A stretch of 64,000 bases of DNA from Marsupella aquatica (Eukaryota > Plantae > Marchantiophyta): assembly GCA_973895155.1 (NCBI GenBank), contig OZ316898.1, positions 9,561,761 to 9,625,760 on the forward strand, read 5' to 3'. Positions 2,288 to 54,592 of this stretch are shown piece after piece; the stretch's first letter is position 1; every line of letters starts with the position of its first letter. The position numbers and the translations under genes were made by a program. The notes below the pieces were generated by a model. It had not been told where the DNA came from and searched no databases. It worked only from the letters and a program-made list of their open reading frames with translations.

Positions 2288-5200
2288 TCATCTCAAAATC
2301 TCACGGTATACAACATTCCTTGTGTAAAGGTCATGCTTATCAGGATATGCATTCCTTGATATCATAATGCGAATGCCACTCCGAGCACCAACCCTAGACA
2401 ATGCCACATATAATTGACCATGCGAGAAAACAGGGTTTGGTAGAAATATCCCAATCTTTGCCAAGGTTTGACCTTGAGACTTATTGATGGTCATACCAAA
2501 GGCAGCACGGATAGGAAACTGAAATCGTCGAAGATCGAATGGTAACCCTGAGTCAGATGCAATAAGAGGAATGCGTGGAATAAAAACACGATCTCCGATG
2601 TTCTTCCCTGTGATAATTTCTGCATCTATGACATGACGCCCAAAACCACGAACTATCAAGCGAGTGCCATTGGCTTGTCCTTTTGACCCATTCATGTTTC
2701 TCAAAAGCATGATGGGTGCACCAATCTTAAGGGTCAACTTGTGTGGAGGTAACCCCGATGGCAACAATGTATTGAGGAACTCTGTGGGATACATGAAAGC
2801 ACTTGCTTCATTGGGAATTGAATCTGCACTCAAAAACTCATGTTCCTGCAAAAACTCATGAATAAAAATGGTAAAAAAGTTACTAACTTTCATTGAAAGA
2901 ACTTCCCTTGAAATACAACATTTAAAGTTCTTAATGTTGCTAGTGGTAAGGAATTTACCTCTCCAGGAAAGCCACACATCACCTCCTCATTGACCTTATC
3001 CACATCTTTGTTTGTGGTGGTCAAGATAGCTCTATCTTTTAGAAAGTTAACATTGTTGAAGTTCATTGGATCTGAGGCATAGATCTCAACAATAAGGTCA
3101 CTAAGATGGTCAGTTGGCATTATCAAGTCATGCGGTAAACAAATGACATCATCGCCCAAATCAGGCTCTGTTGGCAAAGTCCCCTCTCCAATTGCTAGTA
3201 ACCAATCGCTAAAGCCTTGTTGCTCAAGCGCCTCTTGTCCTATATATATAAGAAAATCCAAGAAAGTTGTCAAAAGTTTTGAAGCAAATTATACATACTT
3301 TAGTATAATTTTCCTTATTCCAACATTGAGAAGTTATTAGTGCTAAAATAAATTAACATTTCAAAAACTAAGTGAAAATATAATTCTAGAAGGATTATAA
3401 TTATAACACACTAAGTATAATTTAATATACATTTGAAACAATGATTGATAGTAAAACATACCTTCTAGTGTTTTGACTCTCATGTTCTCACTTAGCCTCA
3501 TCATTTTCATCTTTGACCATATAGAAGATCTTTTGAAGGTGGCTCGAATGATGGCTGCTTGATCTCCATGTCGAACAACAGGAAGCACTTGGCGAAAATC
3601 ACCACCAAAGATCATTAATTTTCCCCCAAATGGCAAGTTGCACTTCATGATATCTTGAAGTGTCCGACTAACAGCCTCAAAAGCATGTCTATGAGTCATG
3701 GGTGCTTCATCCCATATGATCAATAATGCAGATCGGATCAAGCGTGCAACTTCACTTTCCATTACTATGCTGCACACAATCATCACAAAAGTAATCAGGA
3801 AAAAACAGAATTCATATATTATCCTCCAAACCAATAGCTCGGAATTCCACATAATAGTATTTTTCATAAACTCAATCTCACTATGAACACAATTTCAGCT
3901 TCTTACTTGCAAGTAGAGCTTTCGTGAACAATGAGTGGAATCTTGAAACGTGAATATGCCGTGCGACCTCCCTGTAATAATAAGGCTGCAATCCCCGATG
4001 ATACCACGGCAAGAGCGATATGCCCCTCACATCTAACCCTTGCTAGTAGAAGATTATACAAAAATGTCTTTCCAGTTCCACCTGGTCCATCAATAAAGAA
4101 TAGATGCTCCTAGATGAATTAAAAGCTATGAGTTAGACATGAGAAGCATTGATAGTGTGAAAATAGAAAATATCATTATCATGCCAAAATACATTAAAAT
4201 CAATGTATATACTTACCCGAGGAGATTCACCTTGCAATATGATCTCACAAACATCATTCACTTGTTGCCAAATTAAATTTTGTCCATCATTTAACTTGGC
4301 TTCTCCTTCCAATGCACATGCACATAGTGCAACACGATCATATGAGAGCTCCTCTAACTCCAAATGAGAATGAGTCTCTTCATTGCAAATAAAATTTGCT
4401 TGATACATGTCAGAAAAATGAGAAAGCCTTTTGTTGTGATCTTGTAAATAATGGTCAATTTCCAACAATGCATCATTGAGTAGAGCATGTTGAGGAAGAT
4501 CAGATATTCCAAATTCCTACATGTACAATGTAGTTGACCAATGTTAGTTTGTGAAATAAATATAATATTAGAATGTACATGTCATGTAAGGAAAAAACTT
4601 GATTTGTGTAAAAAATAATACCTGATGTCTCAAATACAATAGATCTTCGGTCATTGATGTTACAAATTGATCCCATAACTCTTTAGGGTGTGCAGGTGTG
4701 TTGTAGAGAAGAATGATGGCAAAAAGTTGACGGACTGCACGCCCAGTCCGAATCTCTGAACATTCTCTCAAACAATCAATAACCTCTGTATCATGATCTT
4801 CCAAGAGCCCCAACTTAATTGCTGCCTCCTTAAAAGTGGGCATGACCATGCCATCAATTGTTTTTAAGCTATCATATCCCCTAGTCCCTTTAATATGATG
4901 AAGAAGTAATCGCATCCAATGACGTTCTCCTTCACCTGCACAATAAAATTGTATTAAAGCATAATAAAGTTTTAAAATAAATAACAATGAATTCAATTCT
5001 TTGAGTGTTAAGTCAAGATGCAATCATACCTGGATGAGTCAAATATAACCGACCAATAGGATATCCACAGCCTTTTATCTTTTTCTTACGAACAATCCAT
5101 TTCTTTTGGTTTTTGTTCCAACTATAATGAAGTGGAAACTCATGGTATTTATGTTGTCGTGCCCTTGGATCACTAACATTCATTGCAAACCATTCTGTCA

Positions 5201-8200
5201 ATGTGGTTGCCACCCTCCGTTGCAAAATCTCCTCGGTTGTAACATTCTCACTAAAAACAATACTTTGCTCATTCTCAAGATGAACAGATAATCGAACAAT
5301 ACTTGGCTCTTCTAAATGCAATCGAAACTTGAAAATGCGCCAACATGCTTCAACAGATGAGATATATCTGTACATAAAAAACATTAGTAAGATTTGGAAA
5401 ATCCTCAAATAGAACCAAATAACAATTGTAAAAAACTTTTAATAAACTTTAAATTATTGCAACACTTAAAATTAACAAACTAATATGAAATAAAAACATA
5501 TAATAAAATAATTATCGTGCATCTCGATATTCCAAGACCTCATCTAGTGCTGCCTCCATCCCAATTGTGCCACCAGTTCGTGACAATCGGACCAAAACTG
5601 CATCGGATCCCTTATATACATATTTGTAAATGTACTTCACAGCCGCAATGCCATTGGTAACTTCTAGATTTATATGGCAATCAAAAAGTGTGCACAATAA
5701 TCTATTGTATGGCACCACCCAACGATTATCCAAAAAACAATTTTTCTTCTTCACCGTATGACCATCATCTCGTCTGCAATATTTAAGGTAGAAAAGTAAA
5801 TATAAGAATTATGTCCACAATTGAAAAATAATATAAAGATATTAATTAAAGCATGATATACAAGTAATTGAAATCAATGTCACACCTGCGATATGTAGGG
5901 TACCCATCCTCGCTTAATGTGGTGTGGGTTGCAAAAGGCTTGGGAAAACCTTTTGAGCACACTCCATTTTTCATGCATGGAGCATTTCGCATTTGAACAC
6001 CACATGGTCCGTGCATCATGCAAGTAACAACAGTTTGATAAAGACTTGGATGTAAAATAGGATCTGGTATTTCCGCAGAAATAACATCATCAATATGGGT
6101 AGCATTTTGTGGTTTGTCCTCATAACCCATGCACATCAAAAGATGAATGTGTGGCAAACCTCTTTTTGGGAATTCTATAGTATGTATCTTTGTCACACAC
6201 TTACCCAAAATCTTCTGATTTTTTAGCAGATCTAACAATGCCTTCTTCTTCAGTTCAAACACTCGAGCAATCAAGTCAGAACGATTAGCCGCTTTTTGAT
6301 TGCTACATACCAATTCGTCTGTGATCTCCTTCCACGCAGGATTGCATGTCATTGTCAAGAAAAAATCAGGCTTGCCAAAATGCCTAACAATAGCCATGGC
6401 ATCCTGAAATAACTGGTGCATATGGCGTGGACCCCCTATGAAGCTTGAAGGTAAGATGATGCGTCTTCCAATGTCTGCTGCATCATGATCATGCCTCGTC
6501 ACTGCATCTTGAACCCCTTGATATAGATGCACCCTCAATTGAGGTTGATGGGTACGTATGTAGGTCAACCTCTGGCTCTCAATAGTGGCATAAACATCCA
6601 CCATGTACTCTTGATAAAGCCGATCAAAACGTGTCAACCTACTACCATCCATGCACATTGTAGGATTATCCTCCCTTGTATGAAATCTAAATGAAGCAAA
6701 CTCCAAAGAGGTTACATTCTTTGTCCCTGTATCTGCATGTGTATCATTATCCATCATGTCGTTGTAGGCTCTCCCATGAATAATAGCCTCCACCACACCC
6801 TCTTCACTTTCCATAGCAACATTCTCTTCTACTATAGAAGAATTACGTTTCTGAATGCCTATATGCCATCATGCCTCACCGTATGGAAATAGTAGAACAA
6901 AATGCAAAGGAATATATGCCTGATTCAGGTCAAATATACGACGAACTCCTCCTCCATGCAAGTATACAATTATATCACGTGGACCAACTTCCTCACTTCC
7001 ATCTCTAGGAATAATGGCTGCGACCTCCGATGCTACCGGCAAGTTATAACGTCTAGCATCAAGACCTCTCTCGCTAGCTTTTAGTACTATGCGCATATTT
7101 TGACTACCAACCTCACATGCTATAGCTTGAAATAATCTCACATATGCATTATGCTCACGCATAAGATTCTGTAATCCTCTCAAGGTCTCAATCTCAATAC
7201 CATCAGTAATAACCCTTTCTCTATTCTCTATTTTGTGCTCAGTGTCATAAATATAAAGTTGAGCAAATTTTGGGGGTTGTCCTACCTCAGGATATAGAGG
7301 ACCAATAGAATGATAGATCCCACCTTGAATGCGAAGATGTTTTATGCCACCATGTACTTCTCCAGACATGTTAGCACCGGTGGATGCAAGCTGAAGTGCA
7401 GAGTTATAAGCTCGAATGTGACTCAAAAACCTTTTACTAGTTGGTCCCTCATCTGAGACCAATGATGCCAAGAATGGAGGAAGAGATCGCAATGGTGGTA
7501 AATCCACCCTACCATGATTACAACACTTGCCAAATGGAGAGTCTTTGAATTTTGTAGAACTTACTTTCTCTCGGGCCTCCAATGCAATGCCTTACAAAAT
7601 GGGCATACCACATTCATCCGCCCAAGGTAATGATGACCACTCTCTTGATTGATTTGACCTTGTAGCTTCAAGTGAAACACATGTTGTTGATCAAATATGC
7701 GACGACATGCTATGTTGCTGAAAAAATGAATAGCTAGTGTTAGTTAAATCATATTCCTAATTAAAAAACCAACTCAAAAACTCAATCAATCCTCTAACAA
7801 CAAATAATTTCACAAAATAAAAAACTAAATAATATAATTAAAAGTCAAACAATAAGGCTATAAGTTTAATCTATCCACTAAAATTCAACAAATGTTAACA
7901 TACATAGTTGGGAGGCGTGCGATACGACTTGTGCGTTGAGGTGGTGGGTTGATCTCGATTTGTGAAGGCACTATGATATCTTCATCTGGAAGCGGTCCCC
8001 TATAATGAACAAAAACAACATAAACTATTATTTTCAATTCAAAACTAAAAATTTTACTCACAATTAATATGAAAATAATGAATTTAATTCATACCTAGAG
8101 GTAGACCCATGTTGTATCACAGGGGGGACTATTTCTTCAGCAATATTTTGAGGTTGGTCAGTCCTCATTGCACGTCTATTTCTTTGTCCCTCTGCTCTAT

Positions 8201-19093: not shown

Positions 19094-20416
19094 TCAAGTC
19101 GTGTATCCAGCAGGTGACAGAAGCGCAACCTCATCGATCATAGGCCCGCAAGAGTCATTGAAGTTAAGGCTGCTAAATGAAATTGATGTAACGTTTGTCA
19201 AAGCCCAGAAGGTAACAGTGTGAAACTGCCATAGACTTCCTATGTTGATGCTGTTTGAGCTTGACACATTCATGGTGAAGGTCTGTTGTAACTCAGGTCC
19301 GGCATTCGGTACTCCTGCTGTGACGTTGACAACTGTAGAACTCGCGTTAGTTACCCGCACCATCAACCGAGCTTCGTCGTACGTTGGGCTGCATTGCCAT
19401 GTTGGCCGGGATTCTATGTACAACTGTGGGGGAAACCCATTGAAGTAGAAGGAGAGAAGGTATTGACTTCCCACCTCCGTTGCAATCGTTTGACTGACCT
19501 GACCCCAGTGATCAGCGTCTGAGTGAGTATTCAAATGAACGCTGTATGATCCTTCAGCAGGTGCAAGCAACCCAGATTTCACATAATCAATGGGGCCATA
19601 GTCAATGACCCACCCACAGAGGGAGAAGTAGCTGGGTGTCGCTTGGGTCCAGTCGTTCCAAGCAATATTAGATCCGGCTTGAATTGTGCTTCTTTCGAAA
19701 CCTCCGTTGACAATTTTACCAAGAGACGAATTGGCGACCTTGAGCAACCCCTCGACCGTGAACCTGTTAGTAAATCTGTCAATCAAGTTCCTCCCGGACA
19801 GAAATGTGAACTCAGAAGTATACGAATAGCCTGGAACTGGGACGCCCGAGAGGGATGAGTTGAGAGTGATATCGAATTCATAAACTTGACTTGTAGGATT
19901 CGTCTCCTTGTTTGGCAGTTCTCCCACCATAAACAACTGCTCCCCTTGTGGCCTTGGCAATGCGCTGATCACACGGCTGCCACTCCTTCTCCACTGTTGA
20001 CTAAGTGCAGAAGAATCGCAAGGGCGCAATTTCAGTACACCCAGAGAATCCCAAGTGACAGCATCGATGCAAAGAACCTGAGTCAGATTTCCGAAAACGA
20101 TGGTTTGTGAAGGTTCGTGGTAAGCCCACATCTCGTTATGTTGAACTCCATCGCACCTGTAGGTGCCAATTGTGAGGTTCCAGAAAGGGCCGTTTGCTAG
20201 ATCTGCAGCAGTTCGAGTATAGCGAGTGTCATATGTCAACCCGTTAATGCAGTACGTGCAGTAAGGTTCAGAACCAGGACTGTAGGTGCCACTGGCAAGC
20301 CACCCGAAGTCGTAGTCTTCGGGGTTGGAGCTGTAGTTCCAGACCGCTTGGACGCGCGAAGGCAGCAAGGAATTGCATGTCCACGTGAGCACCAGCACCA
20401 TCCAAAACATCGTCAT
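19094..20416 (-). CDS. Secreted ricin-B-lectin-like + DUF642-like protein (ectodomain-only paralogue of the kinase at 29426)
   Basis: Intronless 440-aa frame from the first ATG (20416). Signal peptide MTMFWMVLVLTW...VQA. Ricin-like YRCDG..NEMW / LCID...LKLRPCDSS..SQQW. DUF642-like IVNGGFE...GW...IDY...EGSYSVHLN...QVSQTI.T..G..Y.LSF...CGPMIDEV. Ends TGA TAA with no transmembrane or kinase domain. Confidence 0.85.
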   Translation of the reverse strand: MTMFWMVLVLTWTCNSLLPSRVQAVWNYSSNPEDYDFGWLASGTYSPGSEPYCTYCINGLTYDTRYTRTAADLANGPFWNLTIGTYRCDGVQHNEMWAYHEPSQTIVFGNLTQVLCIDAVTWDSLGVLKLRPCDSSALSQQWRRSGSRVISALPRPQGEQLFMVGELPNKETNPTSQVYEFDITLNSSLSGVPVPGYSYTSEFTFLSGRNLIDRFTNRFTVEGLLKVANSSLGKIVNGGFERSTIQAGSNIAWNDWTQATPSYFSLCGWVIDYGPIDYVKSGLLAPAEGSYSVHLNTHSDADHWGQVSQTIATEVGSQYLLSFYFNGFPPQLYIESRPTWQCSPTYDEARLMVRVTNASSTVVNVTAGVPNAGPELQQTFTMNVSSSNSINIGSLWQFHTVTFWALTNVTSISFSSLNFNDSCGPMIDEVALLSPAGYTT

Positions 20417-20887
20417 GACATCTACAATCGGACCTTTCGTATGATTGGGGTTGGCCAGTGTGCAATCGGCAAACGAACTCCAAGCTACAGAGTTGCTATT
20501 TCTATCTAAGTGTCGATCAGTGTCCCACCCCACAGTCCACTCTGTCTGATTTGAGAGGCCGGGGCACTATTTGCCCATTCACGTATGGTAAGCCCTTGAC
20601 GAAGCATAGCATTGACGAGTAAGACGATCCAAATGTGGAGTAAGTTGGTCTCAAGTCGAGATGTGCAAGATCACAACGACCAAAACTGCGTGGGCCATCG
20701 GAAACTACTCGGCAGTTAGTGGCTGCAATGTGGCAAGGAAAGTCGTGAGAATTTTTCCTGTTCATCTTGTTATCTATGCTGACTAGGTATGTAGCCTGAC
20801 AATTCGCATTTCGTTTAGGGAAAATGGTCTCTCGGGATGGCCACTGTCTGAAGCGGACCAGTCACTCGGCGCTCAGCATAATTTGTC

Positions 20888-28655: not shown

Positions 28656-29425
28656 ATTACAATTACAGTCGAGAAGAGCCAAATGCCTATGCGCTGCATG
28701 ATTATAATGAGGGGGCCCGATGTGAGAACAGAGCTAGAAATCGATGGCGAGGCACTGACTGCGAGGTGGAGTATAGTATAGATTTGATTTGTCTCTATCA
28801 CCAAGCCACTTGATAGCGAGCTAATTGGCTGATATGTGATGATTGTCATGTGAGTCTCGTAAAGTTGAAATCCCAATTATTCGGAAGCACGCTTTCCACA
28901 GAATGGTACAGTGACCAACCTGACCTTGCGAAAGAGCTAGTCTACACTAGCTGATCCGTCGATTTAAGCCAAGTTTGTCAATTCATTAGATCTCACTTGC
29001 TCCCACGCAGGAATATCGGGAGGAATATGATACCTGGCACTCGGAGACCCGTTCAGCGATGGCTTGCACTTGGAGACCCGTTCAGCGATGGCTTCAGCAG
29101 TCTGGCAATAGTTAAACCTTCTTGTTTTGTATGTCAGATTCGACGACGTGGTTATCAGAAGCAGCTGTCGAAACCGGGCCTTGTTCGATGCATGCAACTG
29201 AATTCTCAAGCTCAGAGAGTCAGAATTCAATTCGTGTCATTCCCATCTGAAACCAAATGCCTGATCAAATGAATTGTATCGGTTGGCTGAGTTCAATTTC
29301 CGACCATAGCTAGCAGTCTTAGGTGCGACGGCCCGTAGATCTTCCGCAGGTTGCCGCTTGGTTGAGCAGCTGGAGCGAGCAGCAGCTGCGTGAACTGGCG
29401 GACAAGTGCAGCCTCCGTGTGTCCG

Positions 29426-32211
29426 ATGGCCACCTCGAATCAACACGCTGGCGACATGGCACATCAAATGCTCTACTTGTTGTGGCTTTTGCTGGCGTTC
29501 AGCTTGATGTGCACTCCCTTCTTGCTCTGGCCCGTTCAGGCGAATTGGAACTATAGCTCCAACCCGGCTGATTACGACTTCGGCTGGTTAGCCAATGGCA
29601 CAGATCATAGCGGTCCGGAGCCGTACTGTACGTTTTGCATTAACGCATTGACATATGACACCTCCTATAATCGAACAGTTGCAGATGAAGCAAGAGGCCA
29701 TTACTGGAATCGCACAATTGGCACTTATAGGTGTGATGGCGTTGAAGATAATGAGCACTGGGCTTACCACCAACCCACACGAACCATCGTCTTCGGAAAT
29801 CTTACTCAAGTTCTCTGCATCGAGGCTAGCACTTGGACTACTCTGGGTCTACTGAAGTTGCGGCCCTGCAATTCTTCTGCGATCAGTCAACAGTGGAGGA
29901 GGAACGGCAGTCGCGTGATCAGTGCATTGCCAGGGCCAAATGGGGAGGAGCTATTCATAGTGGGAAAATTCCCTGACAAGAACACGAATCCTACTACCCA
30001 AGTTAACATAATACAAGTGACGTTGCAGTCATCCCTCGCCAGTACCTCAGGTCAAGGGTTTTTCTTTTCCTCTAATTTCATATTTCTCTCCGCAAAGGGC
30101 TTGATCGATAGGGCTACCAACAGATTCACAACCCAAGGGTTGCTTGAAATCACAAATTCCTCTCTGGATAATATTGTGAATGGAGGTTTCGAAAAGAGCA
30201 CTATTATAGCTGGATCTGACATTACTTTTAACGACTGGACCCAACCGGTGCCCAGCTATTTCTCCCTTTGCGGATGGGTCATCGACTATGGTCCGATAGA
30301 TTATGTCAAATCTGGATTGCTTGCACCTTTTGAAGGCTCATACAGTATACATTTGAATACTCACTCAGATACTGATCACTTTGGTCAGGTCAGTCAAACA
30401 ATTAGAACGGAGGCGGGGAGTGAGTACCTTCTATCGTTCTATTTCAACGGCTTTCCGCCACAGTTGTACATAGGGTTGTCTCGGCCAACATGGCAGTGCA
30501 GTCCAACGTACAACGAAGCTCGGTTGATGGTGCGGGTAACTAACGCGAGTTTTACAGACAAGATCTCAGCAGGAGTTTCAAATGACCGGACTGAATTACA
30601 GCAGAACTTTAGCATTAATGTAGCCAGGTCAAACAGCCTCAACATAGGAAATTTATGGCAGCTCCATTCGGTAAAGTTCAGGGCCTCGACTAATGTCACC
30701 ACGATTTCCTTCAGTAGCCTGAATTTTAATAACTCGTGCGGGCCAATGATAGATAACGTCATCCTGAGACGTCTTAAGCCACGATCTTTCTGGGAAAGCA
30801 AGACATTTCAGGCAGTTGTTGGATCCGTTGCTGGACTTGTTTTTCTCATGGCATTTCTTCTTGGTATTGTCGTAGCGAGGAGGAGGTTCTGCTTGTCTGA
30901 GGAAGACTACTCTGACTTGTACAAGACTGAGAATGCAAGAATATTTTCTGTCAAAGAGCTGAGCGCCTCCACGAAGAAATTCAGTGCTGTTCTGGGAGAG
31001 GGGGCATTCGGTACTGTATACAAAGCTGATTTTCCAGATGGCACAATAGGTGCAGTCAAAGTGGAGAAGCTGAAGCAGTTTCATCTTTCGACCAAAGTTC
31101 TCGCCTCGGACGAAATTGCTGTTTTACTCAGAGTTCATCACCGCAATTTGGTGAACTTGACGGGCTTCTGCATTCACAAAGGTTTGTAGCTTACTCCCAA
31201 TCGATCTCTCGGGGAGTCCCTCTCCAAACTACACCAACAAGAATGCTAGAGGTCTAAGTTTGGTTGCATCGGGGCTCAGGGAGTGATATAGTTTCTCGAG
31301 CTCTTTCAAAGCTTTTAAGAATTGAGGAATGGTGACTGTATGACCCGTTAAAATATTGCATTGTACGAATTTGTGCAGGGAGACATATGTTGGTATTTGA
31401 GTATCTTCCAAATGGAAGCCTCTACGATCGACTCCATCAGTCTGTCATACCGGTGTCTGCCGCAGATATAATGAATTCCGTCGAACTCCGTGACCTATAC
31501 GCGAACGTACTCCCGTGGCACACGCGGGTCAAAATTGCCTCCAACGTGGCCTATGGCCTTGAATACCTCCACCACGATGCAGATCCTCCGATTGTGCATA
31601 GGGATGTGAAGTCGCGGAACATCCTACTCACAGCCACGGATTCAGCTAAGCTTGCTGACTTCGGGCTTTCCAGATCTGCTCCTTTAGATGCCACAAAGTT
31701 CGAGTCCATCGAGACCATGGTGAGAGGCTCAATTGGGTATTTGGATCCACAGTACTTCCAGACTGGAGTCTTCTCTTCCAAGAGCGATGTGTACAGCTAC
31801 GGAGTTGTATTACTGGAGCTCATCTCTGGCCATCAAGCCATCCACAATGCCGCTGCACTCACCTACTGGGCAGCTCCCTTCATGACGAGCCCATCCCTGT
31901 ATCACGAGCTGGTGGACAAGAAGCTTAGAGGAAAATACGAACCGGATGAGATGGCCTCTCTAGTTGAACTGTCGATTATGTGCACGCAAGAAGACAGTAG
32001 AATGAGGCCCACCATGCGGCAGGTCGTTGCGTTTCTCAATGCCCGGGGCCTTGAAGTAGCTGGAGGTGAATCTCACGAGCAAATAGAGGCCCCGTCCATA
32101 TCAAGGGAGGATTACCATAAGATGAAGCCAATGTTCACAGATTTGGAGGCGTTGCCGAACTTCTCTGGTAGTAATGAGAACATTTTCTTCAGCCCACAGC
32201 CTAGAGACTAA
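29426..32211 (+). CDS. Receptor-like Ser/Thr kinase (RD type, RLK/Pelle) with ricin-B-lectin-like + DUF642-like ectodomain; 2 exons
   Basis: Exons 29426-31181 and 31379-32211 (GT..AG intron 31182-31378; joins as GFCIHKG-RHMLVFEY). Signal peptide ending VQA and TM AVVGSVAGLVFLMAFLLGIVVA-RRR. Kinase motifs GEGAFG, AVK, HRDVKSRN, DFG, GSIGYLDPQY, KSDVYSYGVVLLEL and RPTM. Confidence 0.93.
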
Positions 32212-34745: not shown

Positions 34746-36311
34746 TCATCCAGCGTCAAGACTGTCAAGATTTATAGGATCTTTGCTCATTACTCTAGTC
34801 AGGCGATGGACAACAATGTCTATACTAGTGAAAAACGAAACGAATCCTAGCCCGAAACCTGTAATAAAAGGATTCTTGCCTAAGTATCCAAGGGCTTCGA
34901 GAATATCCACGATGACGGCAAAATTTGTATCTACCTTTTCATCATTGAGACCCCGGTCTCTCTCGTTCAAGATGGACGTCCTCGACTTTTCCCCGAAATC
35001 ACAAGGCAAGTCGAATCGCCCCAATTTAGCAAGCTCTTCCTCCAGGTCTCGAAGGGAATCTGCTCTCACCTTTTCATACTCTGTCTCAGTCTCCTCATCA
35101 TCGTCATCACTCGAAGGAAATTCTGCGGTCAGAAAGCTGCTACAGCCTTCGAAACTTTTCCGTAAATGAGAAATGTTCTGTTGTAGCCAGGTCTGGTCCG
35201 CGTTGGAAATTACAATGCTCAAATGGTGGCTGATTTTATTTCCGAACACGGCGAAAAGCAGCTTAAAGAATTTCCATAGGCGCACCTCTAACCTGTCTAT
35301 TCGGTCCTTCTTCAGGACAAAAAGATACTGGGAGAATGTCCCTTCCTTCAACTCCACAAAGTTCTTGACCTTCTGTTGCGCGAATGGTGTTGGGACGGTG
35401 CTTGCTTCCGATTCGGGTTCTCCGAAGCCTGGAGTGTCGATAACATACCATCCTCGGCCTTCACCACTTGCGACTCCATCTGTTCCTCCTCTGATGCCTG
35501 AACTTGCCTTGAAGTTAGTGGAATTTCGGTCAAGCTTTCCCAAGGTAAGCATTTGTGCAAGAGTCGACTTTCCACTCCCGGTCCTTCCAAACAAGATGAC
35601 TCTTTCGGGACTCCAGGGCCCAAAGCGGTTTCTTCCTAAAACTCTTTCGGAACGACAGCCCATTCCTGACCGTCTGAGTATGCCGCACCAACTTGCGTTG
35701 CTTGAATCTCCTCTGTCGAAGGTAGTCTGTTCGTTCCTCAGAAAGAAAGCGGGACACATCTTCCAAATGCTTTCAACGAGCGTCCCCACCAACGCTTCTG
35801 TCCTAAAGTTTGAGCTTAGGACGCTTTTCGACTTTATCTCGTGTCTGCGCAAACATTTTTCAAGTTGCTGTTGCGACTCGAGACTCAAGCCATTGCTAGA
35901 CTCCGTGATCACAACTGTCATTATGTCCTCGTGATTTCCCCAAATCAGTCCCAAGACATCCAGCCAACAATTGTCACTGAAAACATTCGCATTACAGGGC
36001 TCCTTTACGATGGCATTTGTGGTCACACATATCACAATTACCATCTTCCCGAGAATAACTCTTCTTAAGGAATTTTGGGAGATCCATCGTCTCGCAATTA
36101 GAGTCGGGCTCCTACCCTGAACGTTTCGCAGAGCTAACGTATCAACGACTTGGACTCCAGATGTGTGGGTCAGGATTCGGACCCCAGCCAACGTCTTGTA
36201 TCTCTCCCAACTTCCACCTTTTGTGAGACAGTCGGCCACGAACGTTTTCTCTTCTTCCAAATTCCCCACGACTAAAATGACGGTATTTCCCGAATCATCA
36301 GTATCCTCCAT
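34746..36311 (-). CDS. Intronless P-loop GTPase (AIG1/GIMAP- or MMR_HSR1-like) with a degenerate N-terminal G-domain
   Basis: 521-aa ORF. The C-terminal domain has G1 GRTGSGKS, G2-like T, G3 VIDTPGF and G4-like ISNAD. The N-terminal domain has degenerate VILVVGNLEEEKT and VQVVDTLAL. Hydrophobic C-terminal stretch. Confidence 0.8.
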   Translation of the reverse strand: MEDTDDSGNTVILVVGNLEEEKTFVADCLTKGGSWERYKTLAGVRILTHTSGVQVVDTLALRNVQGRSPTLIARRWISQNSLRRVILGKMVIVICVTTNAIVKEPCNANVFSDNCWLDVLGLIWGNHEDIMTVVITESSNGLSLESQQQLEKCLRRHEIKSKSVLSSNFRTEALVGTLVESIWKMCPAFFLRNEQTTFDRGDSSNASWCGILRRSGMGCRSERVLGRNRFGPWSPERVILFGRTGSGKSTLAQMLTLGKLDRNSTNFKASSGIRGGTDGVASGEGRGWYVIDTPGFGEPESEASTVPTPFAQQKVKNFVELKEGTFSQYLFVLKKDRIDRLEVRLWKFFKLLFAVFGNKISHHLSIVISNADQTWLQQNISHLRKSFEGCSSFLTAEFPSSDDDDEETETEYEKVRADSLRDLEEELAKLGRFDLPCDFGEKSRTSILNERDRGLNDEKVDTNFAVIVDILEALGYLGKNPFITGFGLGFVSFFTSIDIVVHRLTRVMSKDPINLDSLDAG

Positions 36312-45872: not shown

Positions 45873-47681
45873 TCAATTATGCAAAACCTGCCTTTCATCT
45901 TCCACAATCGTGGGCTCATCAAAACCATTACTTCCAGAATCACTTCCCTTTCCATGATCATACACGTTCTTCTCTCCCATACTATCCTGCTCCACTTCCT
46001 GAGATAAACCTAAGAGCCTGTAGGTAATTGCATTAGGCTTGCATCCTTTTTCTTTCATTGCAGCAAATACTCTTGATGCTTCTATCATTCTGTAATTATC
46101 AACCAACCCACCAATCAAGGTGTTGTAGGTGACTTCATCAGGACCAAAACCTTCCTCCTCCATATAATGAAAGAGTTTCCATGCCTCGTCTACCTCATTG
46201 TAATTCAAGAAGCCATTGATTAGAATGTTGTACGTAATCCGATCAGGGGGGCAACCCCTCAGCGCCATCAGATCAAACACATTGCGAGCCGCTTCTGTTT
46301 TCCCGCACTTGAAAAGTCCGACAATGAGGGAGTTATACGTGACTACATCGGGGGCAATTCCCTTGTCTTCAAGTTCATCAAAGATCTTGAGTGCTTCCTG
46401 CCACCGGCCTGCATGACAAAGTCCATGAATTATGGAATTGTATGTTACTCTGTCAGGAGTGCAACCCTTCTCCGTCATCTCAACAACCACCTCTGAGACT
46501 TCTTTGAACAACCCTGCCTTGCAAAGCCCATTGATGACAGAGTTATAAGTAACTCGGTCAGGAATACATTCCTTCTGCCTCATCTCGTTGAGCAGCTCAA
46601 AGATATCGTCAAATAGCCCCGCTCTGCCTAGTCCATTGATAAGAGTGTTGTACGTGTATAAATCAGGGAAGCCCTTCCTTTCCAGCACTCTAGTGAGCTT
46701 AAGCGCAGCACCTACTTTCTTCTCCTTACAAAGCCGGTCTACGAGAACGTTGCACTCAAGATTCCTTGGGGTCAGCCCCTTAGCAATCATCTCTTCCAGA
46801 AGGATAAGGGCAAGCACTAGATTCTTATTGCCGGGTCCTACATTTTTCTTGTCAATCAAGTTCCAAAACTTAAGGTTATACGAATGGGAATTATGCTGGA
46901 ATTCTGGCTGCCTTCCAGCCCAGTTGAAAAAGTGCTCGACTTTGCTTGGGTTCTTCTGTAATTTCATGACTTCTGCAACAATGTGAGGGTTCAGCTTCAT
47001 GCCCAAATGCTTGAGCAACGCTGTAACCCTTTCTTCTCCTCCCACCTCTTGAAACAAGACATTTATCTTTCGTGCGACTAATTTCACCACTTTAGGATAA
47101 TAATTGCCCTCGAGAGCGAAGTCCAGCTCAGGAAACAGCTCCACTGTGATCCTCTCAGTCTTCAAGCTGTCATAAATGGACGCTTTCAGAGCTTTCGGGT
47201 CCACGTCGTCTTCAGATTGACCCACCTCCGACGATGCCTGCACTACTGAACTGCTGAACCTCCAAAATTGTCTCCCAAGAGTTTTTGCCACACAACAAAA
47301 CTCATTTCTGTTGGGAAAACCAGAAGTCCCCAACGGAGCTGTAATGCATCGTCCCAAAGTAGAGCGTTCCAAAGTGACACCTGGACACTTCCATGGGAGT
47401 GAAAGTCCGGCAATCCCAGCTGAAACTGAGGTCAACATTGCTGAATGTTGCACACCAATCACACACTTCCACTTACAAGCATCAGTACGACGGCCAACCT
47501 CTGATGAAATGCAATCCGTTACAGAAAAAACGATCGGTGAGCTGAATGAGTTCCTCTCACTCTGCTTGTTGTACGTTGACAGGAAATGTACAGAGGTACG
47601 AAGCTCGACGACGCCGTAAAGTGATTGCAGCCTAGATTTTGAGCTTATTCTGAACTTCCGAGCCAAACCAAAAAACTGCAT
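45873..47681 (-). CDS. P-class pentatricopeptide repeat (PPR) protein, probably organelle-targeted
   Basis: Intronless ORF with ~8 tandem 35-aa repeats (e.g. VTYNSIIHGLCHAGRWQEALKIFDELEDKGIAPD). The real start may be ATG 47438 (MLTSVSAG..., transit-peptide-like, downstream of a plausible acceptor at ~47501). No E or DYW domain. Confidence 0.92.
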   Translation of the reverse strand: MQFFGLARKFRISSKSRLQSLYGVVELRTSVHFLSTYNKQSERNSFSSPIVFSVTDCISSEVGRRTDACKWKCVIGVQHSAMLTSVSAGIAGLSLPWKCPGVTLERSTLGRCITAPLGTSGFPNRNEFCCVAKTLGRQFWRFSSSVVQASSEVGQSEDDVDPKALKASIYDSLKTERITVELFPELDFALEGNYYPKVVKLVARKINVLFQEVGGEERVTALLKHLGMKLNPHIVAEVMKLQKNPSKVEHFFNWAGRQPEFQHNSHSYNLKFWNLIDKKNVGPGNKNLVLALILLEEMIAKGLTPRNLECNVLVDRLCKEKKVGAALKLTRVLERKGFPDLYTYNTLINGLGRAGLFDDIFELLNEMRQKECIPDRVTYNSVINGLCKAGLFKEVSEVVVEMTEKGCTPDRVTYNSIIHGLCHAGRWQEALKIFDELEDKGIAPDVVTYNSLIVGLFKCGKTEAARNVFDLMALRGCPPDRITYNILINGFLNYNEVDEAWKLFHYMEEEGFGPDEVTYNTLIGGLVDNYRMIEASRVFAAMKEKGCKPNAITYRLLGLSQEVEQDSMGEKNVYDHGKGSDSGSNGFDEPTIVEDERQVLHN

Positions 47682-53091: not shown

Positions 53092-53193
53092 ATCCCTATT
53101 TTAATGGTTGATTGCTCCTTTCCAGATGATGATGCATCTCAGATCCCTATTACCAGTGGTTAATTGCTCCTTTCCAGATGATATTGTATCTCA
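53092..53193. repeat. ~51-bp tandem duplication abutting the stop codon of the fungal-type gene
   Basis: atccctatt...tggtt.attgctcctttccagatgat...atctcag occurs twice. Confidence 0.85.
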
Positions 53194-54462
53194 GATATGG
53201 GGTAAGAAACTGCACCAATTGACAGCCTGATAAATCACAGAAGGAAGCGCTCTCAAGGTGAGGATCGACTCGGTTAGGACCACCGTGCGAACCACCATAT
53301 ACGCACCAACAGGCGGCCCACAGAAACACAACTGTGCCCAAAACGGCATCACCGCCACCAGCTCCCAAAGTGACGAAGCCCGTGCTTTGAAGAGCTTTTC
53401 TGCAATGAACGGCGCGAAGTACGATCCCAGCGGCAAGGCTAAGCCATACGCACTGATGAGCCCAAATTCGATGAAGTTCGATATCGTCCACAGAAACCAC
53501 TCGATCCTGGAAGGAAACGACATCGTCCACGCTACCGCGACCTGTAGTCCGTAGTACATAAATTGGAAGAAGCTCAAGTACACAATCATACCCCAGCCGA
53601 TACCTTCAGCCGGGATAACCTTGCTGTCCGCCAAGGCTTCGCCCCTCGCTCCTGCTTCATCCCCGAAACCGAACATGACACCATAGACGAATCCAAACGC
53701 GAACCAGAATGGCCTTATCAAGCTCCTCATGTCTGGTGGCCGTTTGACGAAGTCGAGCGGCGTCCCCTTGTAAGGTCCTTCGGCACCCACATCGCGCCGC
53801 ACCTGCAAAGCCGGGGTGTCCATGCTTAGCACCTGCGGGTAGTTTGGGTCCAACGGCTTGTAGTACCAGAAGAAAGAGGTGTGCAGAGCGCACAAGATGA
53901 ATGCCAGCGTTGTTAGTTCCAGCGGCGCGAACCCGATGTTCGCCACTCCGCGCCCCAAACAATTTATAGAGAACCAGGCCATTTGAACGGCTGTGAAGGC
54001 GCGCGCAAGTTCGTCTGCTTTATTCACGTTGCGGATGTCGTCGGTACTGATCTGCGGCATGGGTAAGTATTTGTATTGCACCAGATATGCCAGCTGCTGA
54101 CTGTCGACAGGGAATGGCTCGATGTCCGGAGGTGCCACCTTAATCCCGCGCATGTTGGCAAAGAAGCCATGGCGCATCGTCCACTCATGGTGACCTATCG
54201 CGGCGAATTTGGAAACGGACTGCCGTGCCGAGAGCCATTCCTCGGCTGCTGTGGCGACGACGACTTCGGGGAAGAAAATAGTAAACACCTGCCAGCGGAA
54301 CTTGTACAACCCGAAGCGCCAACGCTGCTGCGGGAGGTTGAGGCACAGCGACGTCCAGGTGCAGAGGTAGATTGTGGCGAGGCTGCTATACAGAATATTG
54401 ATGGTGCCACGAGTGGTAGGCGGCGACCTCCAGCCCCGATCCACAGAAGGGTTGGTGTCCAT
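53191..54462 (-). CDS. Fungal-type uncharacterised multi-pass membrane protein (candidate horizontal transfer)
   Basis: Intronless 423-aa frame from ATG 54462. Motifs GWRSPPTTRGTINILYSSLATIYLCTWTSLCLNLP, IFFPE, WTMRHGFFANM, NKADELAR...Q..WF, LELTTLAF..C...FWYYKPLD, AW..SFPS.IEW.LW and LRALP..IY..VNW..FLPHI*. I recognise these as a filamentous-fungal hypothetical protein family. About 7-8 hydrophobic segments; more GC-rich than the flanks. Confidence 0.8.
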   Translation of the reverse strand: MDTNPSVDRGWRSPPTTRGTINILYSSLATIYLCTWTSLCLNLPQQRWRFGLYKFRWQVFTIFFPEVVVATAAEEWLSARQSVSKFAAIGHHEWTMRHGFFANMRGIKVAPPDIEPFPVDSQQLAYLVQYKYLPMPQISTDDIRNVNKADELARAFTAVQMAWFSINCLGRGVANIGFAPLELTTLAFILCALHTSFFWYYKPLDPNYPQVLSMDTPALQVRRDVGAEGPYKGTPLDFVKRPPDMRSLIRPFWFAFGFVYGVMFGFGDEAGARGEALADSKVIPAEGIGWGMIVYLSFFQFMYYGLQVAVAWTMSFPSRIEWFLWTISNFIEFGLISAYGLALPLGSYFAPFIAEKLFKARASSLWELVAVMPFWAQLCFCGPPVGAYMVVRTVVLTESILTLRALPSVIYQAVNWCSFLPHI

Positions 54463-54592
54463 GTGTCTTTGTCTGGAAGAAGCGGTGACAAAGCCATTGT
54501 GGATCAAGATTACAATCAAGCTCTGACCTTATACACGCAGGCGATCGCAGTAATGCCTTGGTTGAATCGTCTAGAAGCATGGAGCCTGGGAT

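What the first reader, a model, noticed from the sequence alone, without database searches (positions are those of the whole stretch)
29426..32211. Receptor kinase with an unusual double carbohydrate-binding ectodomain (ricin-B-like + DUF642-like)
Seen: signal peptide, then a module with ricin-B/QxW-type signatures (YRCDG..NEHW, LCIE...LKLRPCNSS..SQQW; ~29720-29920), then a single DUF642/galactose-binding-like domain (IVNGGFE...CGPMIDNV; ~30170-30765), a TM helix and an intact RD kinase. The whole ectodomain lies in one exon. Established: the canonical plant lectin RLKs are G-, L-, C-type, LysM and malectin-like, and plant DUF642 proteins are kinase-free cell-wall proteins, usually with tandem domains. 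Inference: this is a lineage-specific glycan-sensing receptor class built by domain shuffling. The kinase resembles the URK-1/At1g49730-type clade (GxFGTVYKAxFxDG, HHRNLVxLxGFCI) and has an insert of ~20 aa before LPW. The DUF642 part also resembles bacterial single-domain 'choice-of-anchor C' domains. I do not recall this architecture as a described class, but could not search.
Basis: partly seen in the sequence, partly recalled or inferred. Interest (0 to 1): 0.88.

Follow-up and report, generated by a model that had tools for sequence, protein, structure and literature searches.

The report
Liverwort receptor kinase, trefoil plus DUF642
This is an intact liverwort receptor kinase gene whose outer part joins a ricin-type beta-trefoil to a DUF642 jelly-roll; the same build occurs in ferns and gymnosperms, so it is an old, almost undescribed family of plant surface receptors, not a local novelty.

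Summary
Window 29426-32211 (+) is a two-exon gene (GT..AG intron 31182-31378, in frame). It encodes a signal peptide, an N-terminal module, a DUF642 domain (Pfam 48 bits, cut-off 27), one membrane helix and an RD kinase with all catalytic motifs.

The ricin-B match falls below Pfam's cut-off here (25.9 against 29). An AlphaFold model built on a 34-sequence alignment (pLDDT 84) shows a complete beta-trefoil (Z 15.8 to a Vibrio R-type lectin, about 14 to ebulin and GalNAc-T2). It also shows a CBM61/CBM4-like jelly-roll (Z 14).

The same architecture occurs in Calypogeia fissa (ortholog about 70-74% identical, same intron, same neighbours), ferns (Pteridium, Adiantum, Ceratopteris) and Ginkgo. 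Their kinases form one clade, next to SPARK/URK receptor kinases.

Glycan sensing is plausible but unproven, because the canonical ricin sugar-site residues are only partly kept. The only trace found in the literature is a passing mention of "DUF642-kinase" in a 2025 fern paper.

RNA evidence could not be obtained. The scan noted this family before: another member about 10 kb upstream of the window (s1-769972), and this gene together with its secreted twin (s1-771441).

The parts
29426..31181 (+). Exon 1: start codon, signal peptide, whole ectodomain, membrane helix, juxtamembrane segment and kinase N-lobe up to ...GFCIHK plus the first base of a Gly codon
   Evidence: ORF and translation. The N-terminus MATSNQHAGDMA parallels C. 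fissa P0001 MTIFNRYAGDMA. The donor GT lies at 31182.
29468..29542 (+). Hydrophobic core of the signal peptide (residues 15-39, MLYLLWLLLAFSLMCTPFLLWPVQA)
   Evidence: Read from the sequence. No predictor was run.
29552..30100 (+). R-type (ricin-B/CBM13-like) beta-trefoil, residues about 43-225. Core motifs are ExW (110-112), QxW (155-157) and a degenerate third (F218).
   Evidence: AlphaFold model with pLDDT 84.4. VIA-align gives Z 15.8, rmsd 2.5, 130/133 aligned to 4owk_F, and Z about 14 to ebulin B, SNA-II and the GalNAc-T2 lectin domain. Pfam Ricin_B_lectin scores 25.9 bits, below the cut-off of 29. Invariant family residues are listed. ESM Atlas gives ricin-B clusters at 0.95.
30161..30775 (+). 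Single DUF642 / choice-of-anchor-C-like jelly-roll (residues about 246-450), from NGGFE to CGPMID
   Evidence: Pfam DUF642 48.3 bits against a cut-off of 27. NCBIfam choice_anch_C 69.3 bits, below its cut-off of 120. Fold match to CBM61 2xom_A at Z 14.0 with 141/145 aligned, and to CBM4-2 at Z 13.3.
30812..30877 (+). Membrane helix AVVGSVAGLVFLMAFLLGIVVA, followed by RRRF
   Evidence: Read from the sequence.
30980..31181 (+). Kinase N-lobe: glycine loop GEGAFG, lysine in GAVKVEK, alpha-C glutamate
   Evidence: Pfam Pkinase and PK_Tyr_Ser-Thr on residues 519-584. Motifs.
31182..31378 (+). Single intron (197 nt, GT..AG, phase 1)
   Evidence: Sequence. C. fissa P0001 has an intron at the same place with the same flanks, AAAG|GT...GTGCAG|GGAGACA. 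Locus L003 shows the same split. There is no RNA evidence.
31379..32211 (+). Exon 2: kinase C-lobe (HRD at 31597, DFG at 31657, GYLDPQY at 31735), liverwort-specific insert at 31435-31518, C-terminal tail and stop codon
   Evidence: Pfam PK_Tyr_Ser-Thr 114.6 bits. Motifs. dN/dS is 0.15-0.18 against C. fissa.
19094..20458 (-). Context: a paralogue encoding only the signal peptide, trefoil and DUF642 domain (no membrane helix, no kinase). It is about 65-68% identical to the receptor's ectodomain and is transcribed divergently, with the two start codons about 9 kb apart.
   Evidence: tblastn and ORF. The counterpart P0002 lies about 22 kb from P0001 in C. fissa. dN/dS is 0.26-0.29.

Best explanation
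Shown: this is an intact two-exon gene for a type I receptor kinase, under purifying selection. Its ectodomain is a complete R-type beta-trefoil followed by one DUF642 jelly-roll of the CBM4/CBM61 kind. After that come a single membrane helix and an RD kinase with every catalytic motif in place. It belongs to an old, unnamed land-plant receptor kinase family found in leafy liverworts, ferns and gymnosperms. The family's kinase clade sits beside the SPARK-domain (URK-type) receptor kinases and zygnematophyte LRR receptor kinases.

Inferred: the two carbohydrate-module folds bind a glycan, either a wall polysaccharide such as a galactan or hemicellulose chain, or a microbial glycan. Binding would then switch on the kinase by the usual receptor clustering or co-receptor route. 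The neighbouring secreted twin may act as a soluble partner or competitor.
For: Gene model: ORFs, in-frame GT..AG join. The intron position and splice flanks match the annotated C. fissa ortholog P0001 and locus L003.

Domains: Pfam and NCBIfam results.

Folds: AlphaFold model with pLDDT 84.4 and pTM 0.85. The trefoil scores Z 15.8 and the jelly-roll Z 14.0, each covering almost the whole target domain. Foldseek gives the same families, and ESM Atlas points to ricin-B clusters.

Selection: dN/dS is 0.21-0.25 for exon 1 and 0.15-0.18 for exon 2 against C. fissa.

Orthology and synteny: the twin gene lies upstream and an AIG1-type GTPase gene lies downstream on the minus strand in both genomes.

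Family range: Calypogeia P0001-P0005 and P0201, Pteridium P0008, Adiantum P0011, Ceratopteris P0024, Ginkgo P0013, P0031 and P0280. In two of them (P0008, P0031) the ricin-B hit exceeds Pfam's cut-off.

Kinase tree: the family is one clade with SH-aLRT 95, joined at 93 with SPARK receptor kinases and charophyte LRR receptor kinases.

Possible sugar site: in the alpha subdomain, D87/E88, Y101 and N109 align with D458, Y471 and N479 of the GalNAc-T2 lectin domain. That alignment is weak (E 0.04).
Against: No RNA data could be obtained, so neither expression nor the splice is shown directly.

The Pfam ricin-B score for this protein is below the curated cut-off.

The canonical R-type sugar sites are eroded. 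In the beta subdomain this gene has LCIEA where its relatives have LCxDA, and LKLRPC sits where ricin has an aromatic platform. The gamma subdomain has no QxW (the comparison with ricin is from my own knowledge).

A shared fold does not show function. No ligand, partner or phenotype is known for any family member.

The structure is a prediction from a shallow alignment: about 17 family sequences plus bacterial DUF642 domains.
Confidence: 0.6

Rival explanations
1. The ectodomain keeps carbohydrate-module folds but recognises a protein or peptide instead, or works mainly through pairing with the secreted twin. On this reading it is not a lectin receptor.
For: The canonical sugar-site residues are only partly retained: E for D in LCIEA, no aromatic residue in LKLRPC, and a degenerate third repeat. 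Beta-trefoils and jelly-rolls also serve as protein binders (my knowledge). A conserved neighbouring ectodomain-only paralogue exists in two liverworts.
Against: Both modules find carbohydrate-binding domains as their best structural matches, with near-complete coverage. The alpha subdomain of the liverwort members keeps an acidic-aromatic-Asn set. The DUF642 signature residues NGGFE and CGPxID are invariant across the family.
Confidence: 0.25
2. This is a recent, lineage-specific invention of leafy liverworts made by domain shuffling.
For: The word-based search found only Calypogeia fissa proteins. Published surveys that included Marchantia, mosses and angiosperms list no ricin-B/kinase architecture, and one found DUF642 receptor kinases only in ferns within its data set.
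Against: The exhaustive HMMER search found the same trefoil + DUF642 + kinase build in Pteridium, Adiantum, Ceratopteris and Ginkgo. Their ectodomains align along their full length with shared invariant Cys and Trp residues. Their kinases form one clade with the liverwort ones. Taxus has a DUF642-kinase.
Confidence: 0.05
3. The gene is silent or decaying, an unexpressed duplicate in a tandem cluster, and the model is an annotation artefact.
For: There is no RNA evidence. It lies in a cluster with paralogues. A Helitron-like element lies about 22 kb upstream. A related locus from another run, L004, looks broken into three ORFs.
Against: About 860 codons are uninterrupted across two exons with canonical splice sites. 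All catalytic motifs are intact. dN/dS is 0.15-0.25 against the ortholog. Intron position and gene order are conserved.
Confidence: 0.05

Closest known systems
Plant lectin receptor kinases (G-type, L-type, C-type, LysM, malectin/CrRLK1L classes)
   Same: The layout is the same: signal peptide, carbohydrate-module ectodomain, one membrane helix and an RLK/Pelle kinase. The presumed logic is also the same, with a glycan sensed outside and phosphorylation inside.
   Different: Pfam detects none of those lectin domains here. The ectodomain is instead an R-type trefoil plus DUF642. A survey of lectin domain architectures in 21 plant and algal genomes lists no ricin-B/kinase combination.
SPARK-domain receptor kinases (URK-2/SPARK-I including ARK1/ARK2, URK-1, RKF3; PMC8237591)
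   Same: They are the nearest angiosperm kinases, at 41-43% identity over the kinase domain. With the zygnematophyte LRR receptor kinases they share an SH-aLRT 93 clade in which the order of the three groups is unresolved.
   Different: There is no SPARK domain (PF19160) in this ectodomain. I did not establish which of URK-1, URK-2 or RKF3 is closest, and At1g49730 itself was not compared.
Plant DUF642 cell-wall proteins (tandem two-domain, kinase-free, e.g. Taxus P0136)
   Same: Both match Pfam family PF04862 and share the NGGFE...CGPxID signature. Both are extracellular.
   Different: The receptor has one domain, not two, and it is tethered to a kinase. Similarity to the canonical plant protein P0136 is weak: E 7e-4 in phmmer, and no BLAST hit at 1e-5 in the reverse direction. 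Metagenomic proteins that JGI/IMG names choice-of-anchor C (P0010, P0015-P0017) and a Thermoanaerobaculia DUF642 protein (P0009) score better, at E 1e-9 to 1e-12.
R-type lectins / CBM13 (ricin B, ebulin B, SNA-II, GalNAc-transferase lectin domains, Vibrio hemolysin lectin)
   Same: The predicted fold is the same, at Z 13-16 over about 125-130 residues. There are two (Q/E)xW core motifs. Two Cys pairs appear to sit at the positions of the ricin intrasubdomain disulfides; this is inferred from sequence only.
   Different: The Pfam score is below the cut-off in this protein. The third repeat is degenerate and the sugar-binding triads are incomplete. No plant R-type lectin described so far is fused to a kinase.
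DUF642-kinase proteins noted in ferns and Taxus chinensis A0AA38CBH3 (PMC12512272)
   Same: They are very probably the same family. The fern members found here (P0008, P0011, P0024) carry DUF642 plus a kinase.
   Different: That paper only lists the DUF642 HMM among 'other' receptor kinases. It does not mention the trefoil, bryophyte members, a structure or a phylogeny.

Membership tests
RLK/Pelle receptor kinase | Signal peptide, a single membrane helix and a cytoplasmic Ser/Thr kinase domain with catalytic residues | tested here: met
   Pfam finds the kinase on both exons. GEGAFG, the AVK lysine, HRD, DFG and the hydrophobic segments are read from the sequence.
RLK/Pelle receptor kinase | Kinase domain nests among plant RLK subfamilies in a tree | tested here: met
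   In a quick IQ-TREE of 38 kinase domains the family forms a clade (SH-aLRT 95) inside plant receptor kinases, next to SPARK receptor kinases. Only exon 2 of the window gene was used, because the exons were not joined.
R-type lectin / ricin-B (PF00652, CBM13) | Pfam PF00652 at or above the gathering score | tested here: not met
   This protein scores 25.9 bits against a cut-off of 29. The cut-off is met in relatives P0008 (32.6) and P0031 (32.1).
R-type lectin / ricin-B (PF00652, CBM13) | Beta-trefoil fold | tested here: met
   In the predicted model, Z 15.8, rmsd 2.5, 130/133 aligned to 4owk_F, with dozens of R-type lectins at Z 13-14.5.
R-type lectin / ricin-B (PF00652, CBM13) | Three QxW repeats and an Asp-aromatic-Asn/Gln sugar site in at least one subdomain | tested here: inconclusive
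   ExW (110-112) and QxW (155-157) are invariant, and the third repeat is reduced to F218. The alpha-site candidates D87/E88, Y101 and N109 align with the GalNAc-T2 site residues only in a weak alignment. The beta site lacks the aromatic residue and has E in place of D.
R-type lectin / ricin-B (PF00652, CBM13) | Measured carbohydrate binding | not testable with these tools
   This needs recombinant protein and a glycan array or ITC.
DUF642 (PF04862) | Pfam PF04862 at or above the gathering score, with a jelly-roll fold | tested here: met
   48.3 bits against a cut-off of 27. Fold match to CBM61 and CBM4 at Z 13-14.
Plant DUF642 cell-wall proteins | Two tandem DUF642 domains in a secreted protein with no other domain | tested here: not met
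   The receptor has one domain and is fused to a trefoil, a membrane helix and a kinase.
Choice-of-anchor C (TIGR04362) | NCBIfam score at or above the cut-off | tested here: not met
   69.3 bits against a cut-off of 120.
SPARK / URK-type receptor kinases | SPARK domain (PF19160) in the ectodomain | tested here: not met
   No PF19160 hit at E up to 1. Only the kinase is related.
G-, L-, C-type, LysM and malectin lectin receptor kinases | The corresponding lectin domain in the ectodomain | tested here: not met
   The Pfam scan of exon 1 at E up to 1 lists only DUF642, Ricin_B_lectin, CBM_4_9 and the kinase models.

The most novel reading that the evidence does not exclude
This is a sixth, ancient class of plant lectin receptor kinase, with an R-type trefoil and a DUF642 module. 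It arose before liverworts and vascular plants split, was kept in leafy liverworts, ferns and gymnosperms, and was lost in angiosperms and apparently in Marchantia. It senses a wall or microbial glycan. In liverworts it works together with a conserved, neighbouring secreted copy of its own ectodomain.
Probability: 0.3. Interest if true: 0.7.

Novelty: new variant of a known kind. Interest (0 to 1): 0.55.

Why it matters
Plant surface receptors are classified by ectodomain, and the lectin-type classes are treated as a closed list: G, L, C, LysM and malectin. Here a well-supported two-module ectodomain made of carbohydrate-binding folds is tied to an active-looking kinase. It is conserved from liverworts to gymnosperms, yet absent from the flowering-plant models on which the list was built.

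If it binds a glycan, it adds a receptor class and gives the poorly understood DUF642 domain a signalling context. It would also be a case of an old receptor lost in angiosperms. The fern and Ginkgo members with non-RD kinases (HGD/HSD) hint at an immune role there. The conserved secreted twin in liverworts offers a testable receptor-plus-soluble-partner pair.

Tried and rejected
1. AlphaFold on the single ectodomain sequence gave pLDDT 33 and was useless. It was replaced by the run on an alignment.

2. The profile search with alignment A1 was swamped by kinase words. It added nothing beyond the Calypogeia proteins and did not even return the fern and Ginkgo members used to build it.

4. I did not search or fold the joined (spliced) protein. 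Exons were handled separately by reference, and C. fissa P0001 served as a full-length proxy for the kinase search.

5. phmmer of the trefoil against PDB sequences gave only marginal hits (best E 0.009, GalNAc-transferases). Sequence alone would not have settled the fold.

6. I did not build a DUF642-domain tree to decide between a plant and a bacterial origin, because only one canonical plant DUF642 protein (Taxus P0136) was in hand. The origin stays open.

7. Complex prediction for receptor and twin was not run. I do not claim that they bind, and being neighbours is not reason enough.

Full report
**Observation**

The region holds a long ORF (29390-31189) and a second ORF (31387-32211) on the plus strand. 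A GT donor follows base 31181 and an AG acceptor ends at 31378. Joining 31181 to 31379 keeps the frame and reads ...GFCIHK-G-RHMLVFEYLPNGSL.

Pfam on exon 1 finds:
- DUF642 above the curated cut-off (48.3 bits against 27, residues 250-447).
- Ricin_B_lectin just below its cut-off (25.9 against 29, E 1.2e-5, residues 91-165).
- The start of a kinase domain.

Exon 2 carries the rest of the kinase at 114.6 bits. NCBIfam gives choice-of-anchor C at 69 bits, below its cut-off of 120.

Several features can be read directly from the translation:
- A hydrophobic signal peptide (residues 15-39).
- Twelve N-glycosylation sequons and eight cysteines in the ectodomain.
- A membrane helix (463-484) followed by RRRF.
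- The kinase motifs GEGAFG, the lysine in GAVKVEK, HRD, DFG and GYLDPQY. The last has Gln where most kinases have the APE glutamate, and this is shared across the family.

Each exon was used by reference.

**Fold**

A single-sequence AlphaFold run failed, with pLDDT 33. With a 34-row alignment of family members and bacterial DUF642 domains (A2), the ectodomain model reached pLDDT 84.4 and pTM 0.85.

Structural alignment gives two clean domain matches:
- Model residues 4-186 form a complete beta-trefoil. The Vibrio vulnificus hemolysin lectin 4owk_F scores Z 15.8, rmsd 2.5 Å, with 130 of 133 residues aligned. Ebulin B, SNA-II, an earthworm R-type lectin and the GalNAc-T2 lectin domain score Z about 14 at 12-21% identity.
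- Model residues 207-411 form a jelly-roll like CBM61. The galactan-binding module 2xom_A scores Z 14.0 with 141 of 145 residues aligned, and CBM4-2 scores Z 13.3.

Foldseek ranks the same families. The ESM Atlas feature search returns ricin-B clusters for the N-terminal module.

**Is the gene real?**

The indirect evidence is good.

- The closest protein is Calypogeia fissa P0001, 865 residues long. It is 70% identical over the ectodomain, 74% over exon 1 and 80% over exon 2.
- The annotated P0001 gene has one intron at the identical place, with near-identical flanks: AAAG|GT...GTGCAG|GGAGACA.
- A more distant relative on a Logan contig (L003) is split after the same FCxxxG.
- dN/dS against C. 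fissa is 0.21-0.25 for exon 1 and 0.15-0.18 for exon 2.
- Gene order is conserved. An ectodomain-only paralogue lies upstream: window 19094-20458 on the minus strand, and P0002 about 22 kb from P0001 in C. fissa. An AIG1-type GTPase gene lies downstream on the minus strand in both genomes.

An earlier follow-up note on this genome (s1-763463) calls it a liverwort, which fits.

**Family and range**

The word-indexed search found only C. fissa proteins. The exhaustive HMMER search of 1.84 billion representatives found full-length matches covering both ectodomain modules in several other plants:
- Pteridium aquilinum, P0008 (a transcript-derived ORF, so the family is expressed in ferns).
- Adiantum nelumboides, P0011.
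- Ginkgo biloba, P0013 and P0031.

Ceratopteris richardii P0024 matched over a shorter stretch and carries only DUF642 and a kinase by Pfam.

All of these carry DUF642 and a kinase. All except the N-terminally shorter P0024 also have a ricin-B hit, and in P0008 and P0031 that hit is above Pfam's cut-off. A further, more divergent Ginkgo member (P0280) and another C. fissa paralogue (P0201) came from the kinase search.

The nine-sequence alignment A1 shows invariant residues through both modules: W54, P66, C68, C71, C103, G105, E110, W112, Y114, C131, A134, C148, Q155, W157, F218, then NGGF 252-255, C282, W284 and so on to C438-G-P.

In a tree of 38 kinase domains the family is one clade with SH-aLRT 95. 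It joins SPARK-domain receptor kinases and zygnematophyte LRR receptor kinases at 93. At1g49730 itself was not compared.

The fusion is therefore old, predating at least the split between liverworts and vascular plants. It is not lineage-specific.

Two further differences within the family:
- The liverwort proteins and Ginkgo P0280 are RD kinases. Pteridium P0008 and Ginkgo P0013 and P0031 have HGD or HSD, so they are non-RD.
- The liverwort kinases carry an extra stretch of about 15 residues before LPW.

**What does it bind?**

This part is inference. Both modules have carbohydrate-binding domains as their best structural neighbours, and the DUF642 signature residues are invariant.

The classical ricin sugar sites are only partly kept (the ricin motif comparison is from my own knowledge):
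- In the beta subdomain the relatives have LCxDA but this gene has LCIEA, and LKLRPC sits where ricin has its aromatic platform.
- The gamma repeat has lost QxW.
- The alpha subdomain of the liverwort members keeps an acidic residue (D87/E88), Y101 and N109. These align with D458, Y471 and N479 of the GalNAc-T2 lectin domain, but only in a weak HMMER alignment (E 0.04).

I put glycan binding at roughly 55-60%. A protein or peptide ligand, or a role centred on the secreted twin, is the main rival.

**Origin of the DUF642 part**

Outside the family, the best phmmer hits are mostly metagenomic proteins. JGI/IMG names four of them choice-of-anchor C (P0010, P0015-P0017), and P0009 is a Thermoanaerobaculia DUF642 protein. 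These score E 1e-9 to 1e-12. The top non-family hit, P0007 (E 7e-15), carries no name.

The one canonical plant wall protein in the list, Taxus P0136, scores only E 7e-4. It does not find the receptor family by BLAST at 1e-5.

However, pairwise scores are not a phylogeny, and I leave the origin open.

**Literature**

A full-text search found one trace (PMC12512272 and its preprint). That fern immune-receptor survey lists the DUF642 HMM among unclassified receptor kinases and points to a Taxus DUF642-kinase in InterPro. It does not mention the trefoil, bryophytes or any analysis.

The survey of lectin domain architectures in 21 plant and algal genomes includes Marchantia, two mosses, Selaginella, two ferns, Picea, Ginkgo and four angiosperms. 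It lists no ricin-B/kinase combination (PMC6362431 Table S3). The ricin-B/CBM13 network study does not describe one in plants. Other searches found nothing.

**Verdict**

I rate it a new variant of a known kind, a receptor kinase with a new ectodomain class. It is of moderate interest.

The scan has seen the family before. Another member lies about 10 kb upstream of this window (s1-769972), and this gene with its twin was noted as a pair (s1-771441).

Noticed in passing
window 19094-20458 (-): A paralogue encodes only the signal peptide, trefoil and DUF642 domain and ends ...ALLSPAGYTT, with no membrane helix and no kinase. It is about 65-68% identical to the receptor ectodomain, with dN/dS 0.26-0.29. 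The same pair (P0002 and P0001) lies about 22 kb apart in Calypogeia fissa.
   Followed up: partly
window 34746-36311 (-): An AIG1-family GTPase ORF of 521 residues lies just downstream of the receptor gene. A 516-residue AIG1 gene sits in the same position and orientation next to C. fissa P0001, so microsynteny is conserved.
   Followed up: partly
window 2288-7582 (-): Helitron-like remains: an ORF with Helitron_like_N (185 bits) and another with a Pif1 2B helicase domain.
   Followed up: no
window 45873-47681 (-): An intron-less pentatricopeptide repeat gene of 602 residues (PPR_2 350 bits).
   Followed up: no
window 53191-54519 (-): An ORF of 442 residues with no Pfam hit at E 0.001.
   Followed up: no
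P0008, P0013, P0031 (fern and Ginkgo family members): These members have HGD or HSD in place of HRD, so they are non-RD kinases. The liverwort members and Ginkgo P0280 are RD. The whole family has GY(L/I)DP(Q/L)Y in place of the APE glutamate.
   Followed up: partly
L004:3005-4739 (Logan SRR33208280): A relative of the family appears as three consecutive short ORFs: a trefoil piece, a DUF642 piece, and a DUF642/kinase piece. It could be a broken copy or an error-rich contig. The organism is unknown.
   Followed up: no
L003:1075-3919 (Logan SRR33208241): A distant family member (P0020, 29% identical) from an unknown organism has the same two-part gene structure, split after FCxxxG. A PC-esterase-like gene lies nearby.
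   Followed up: no
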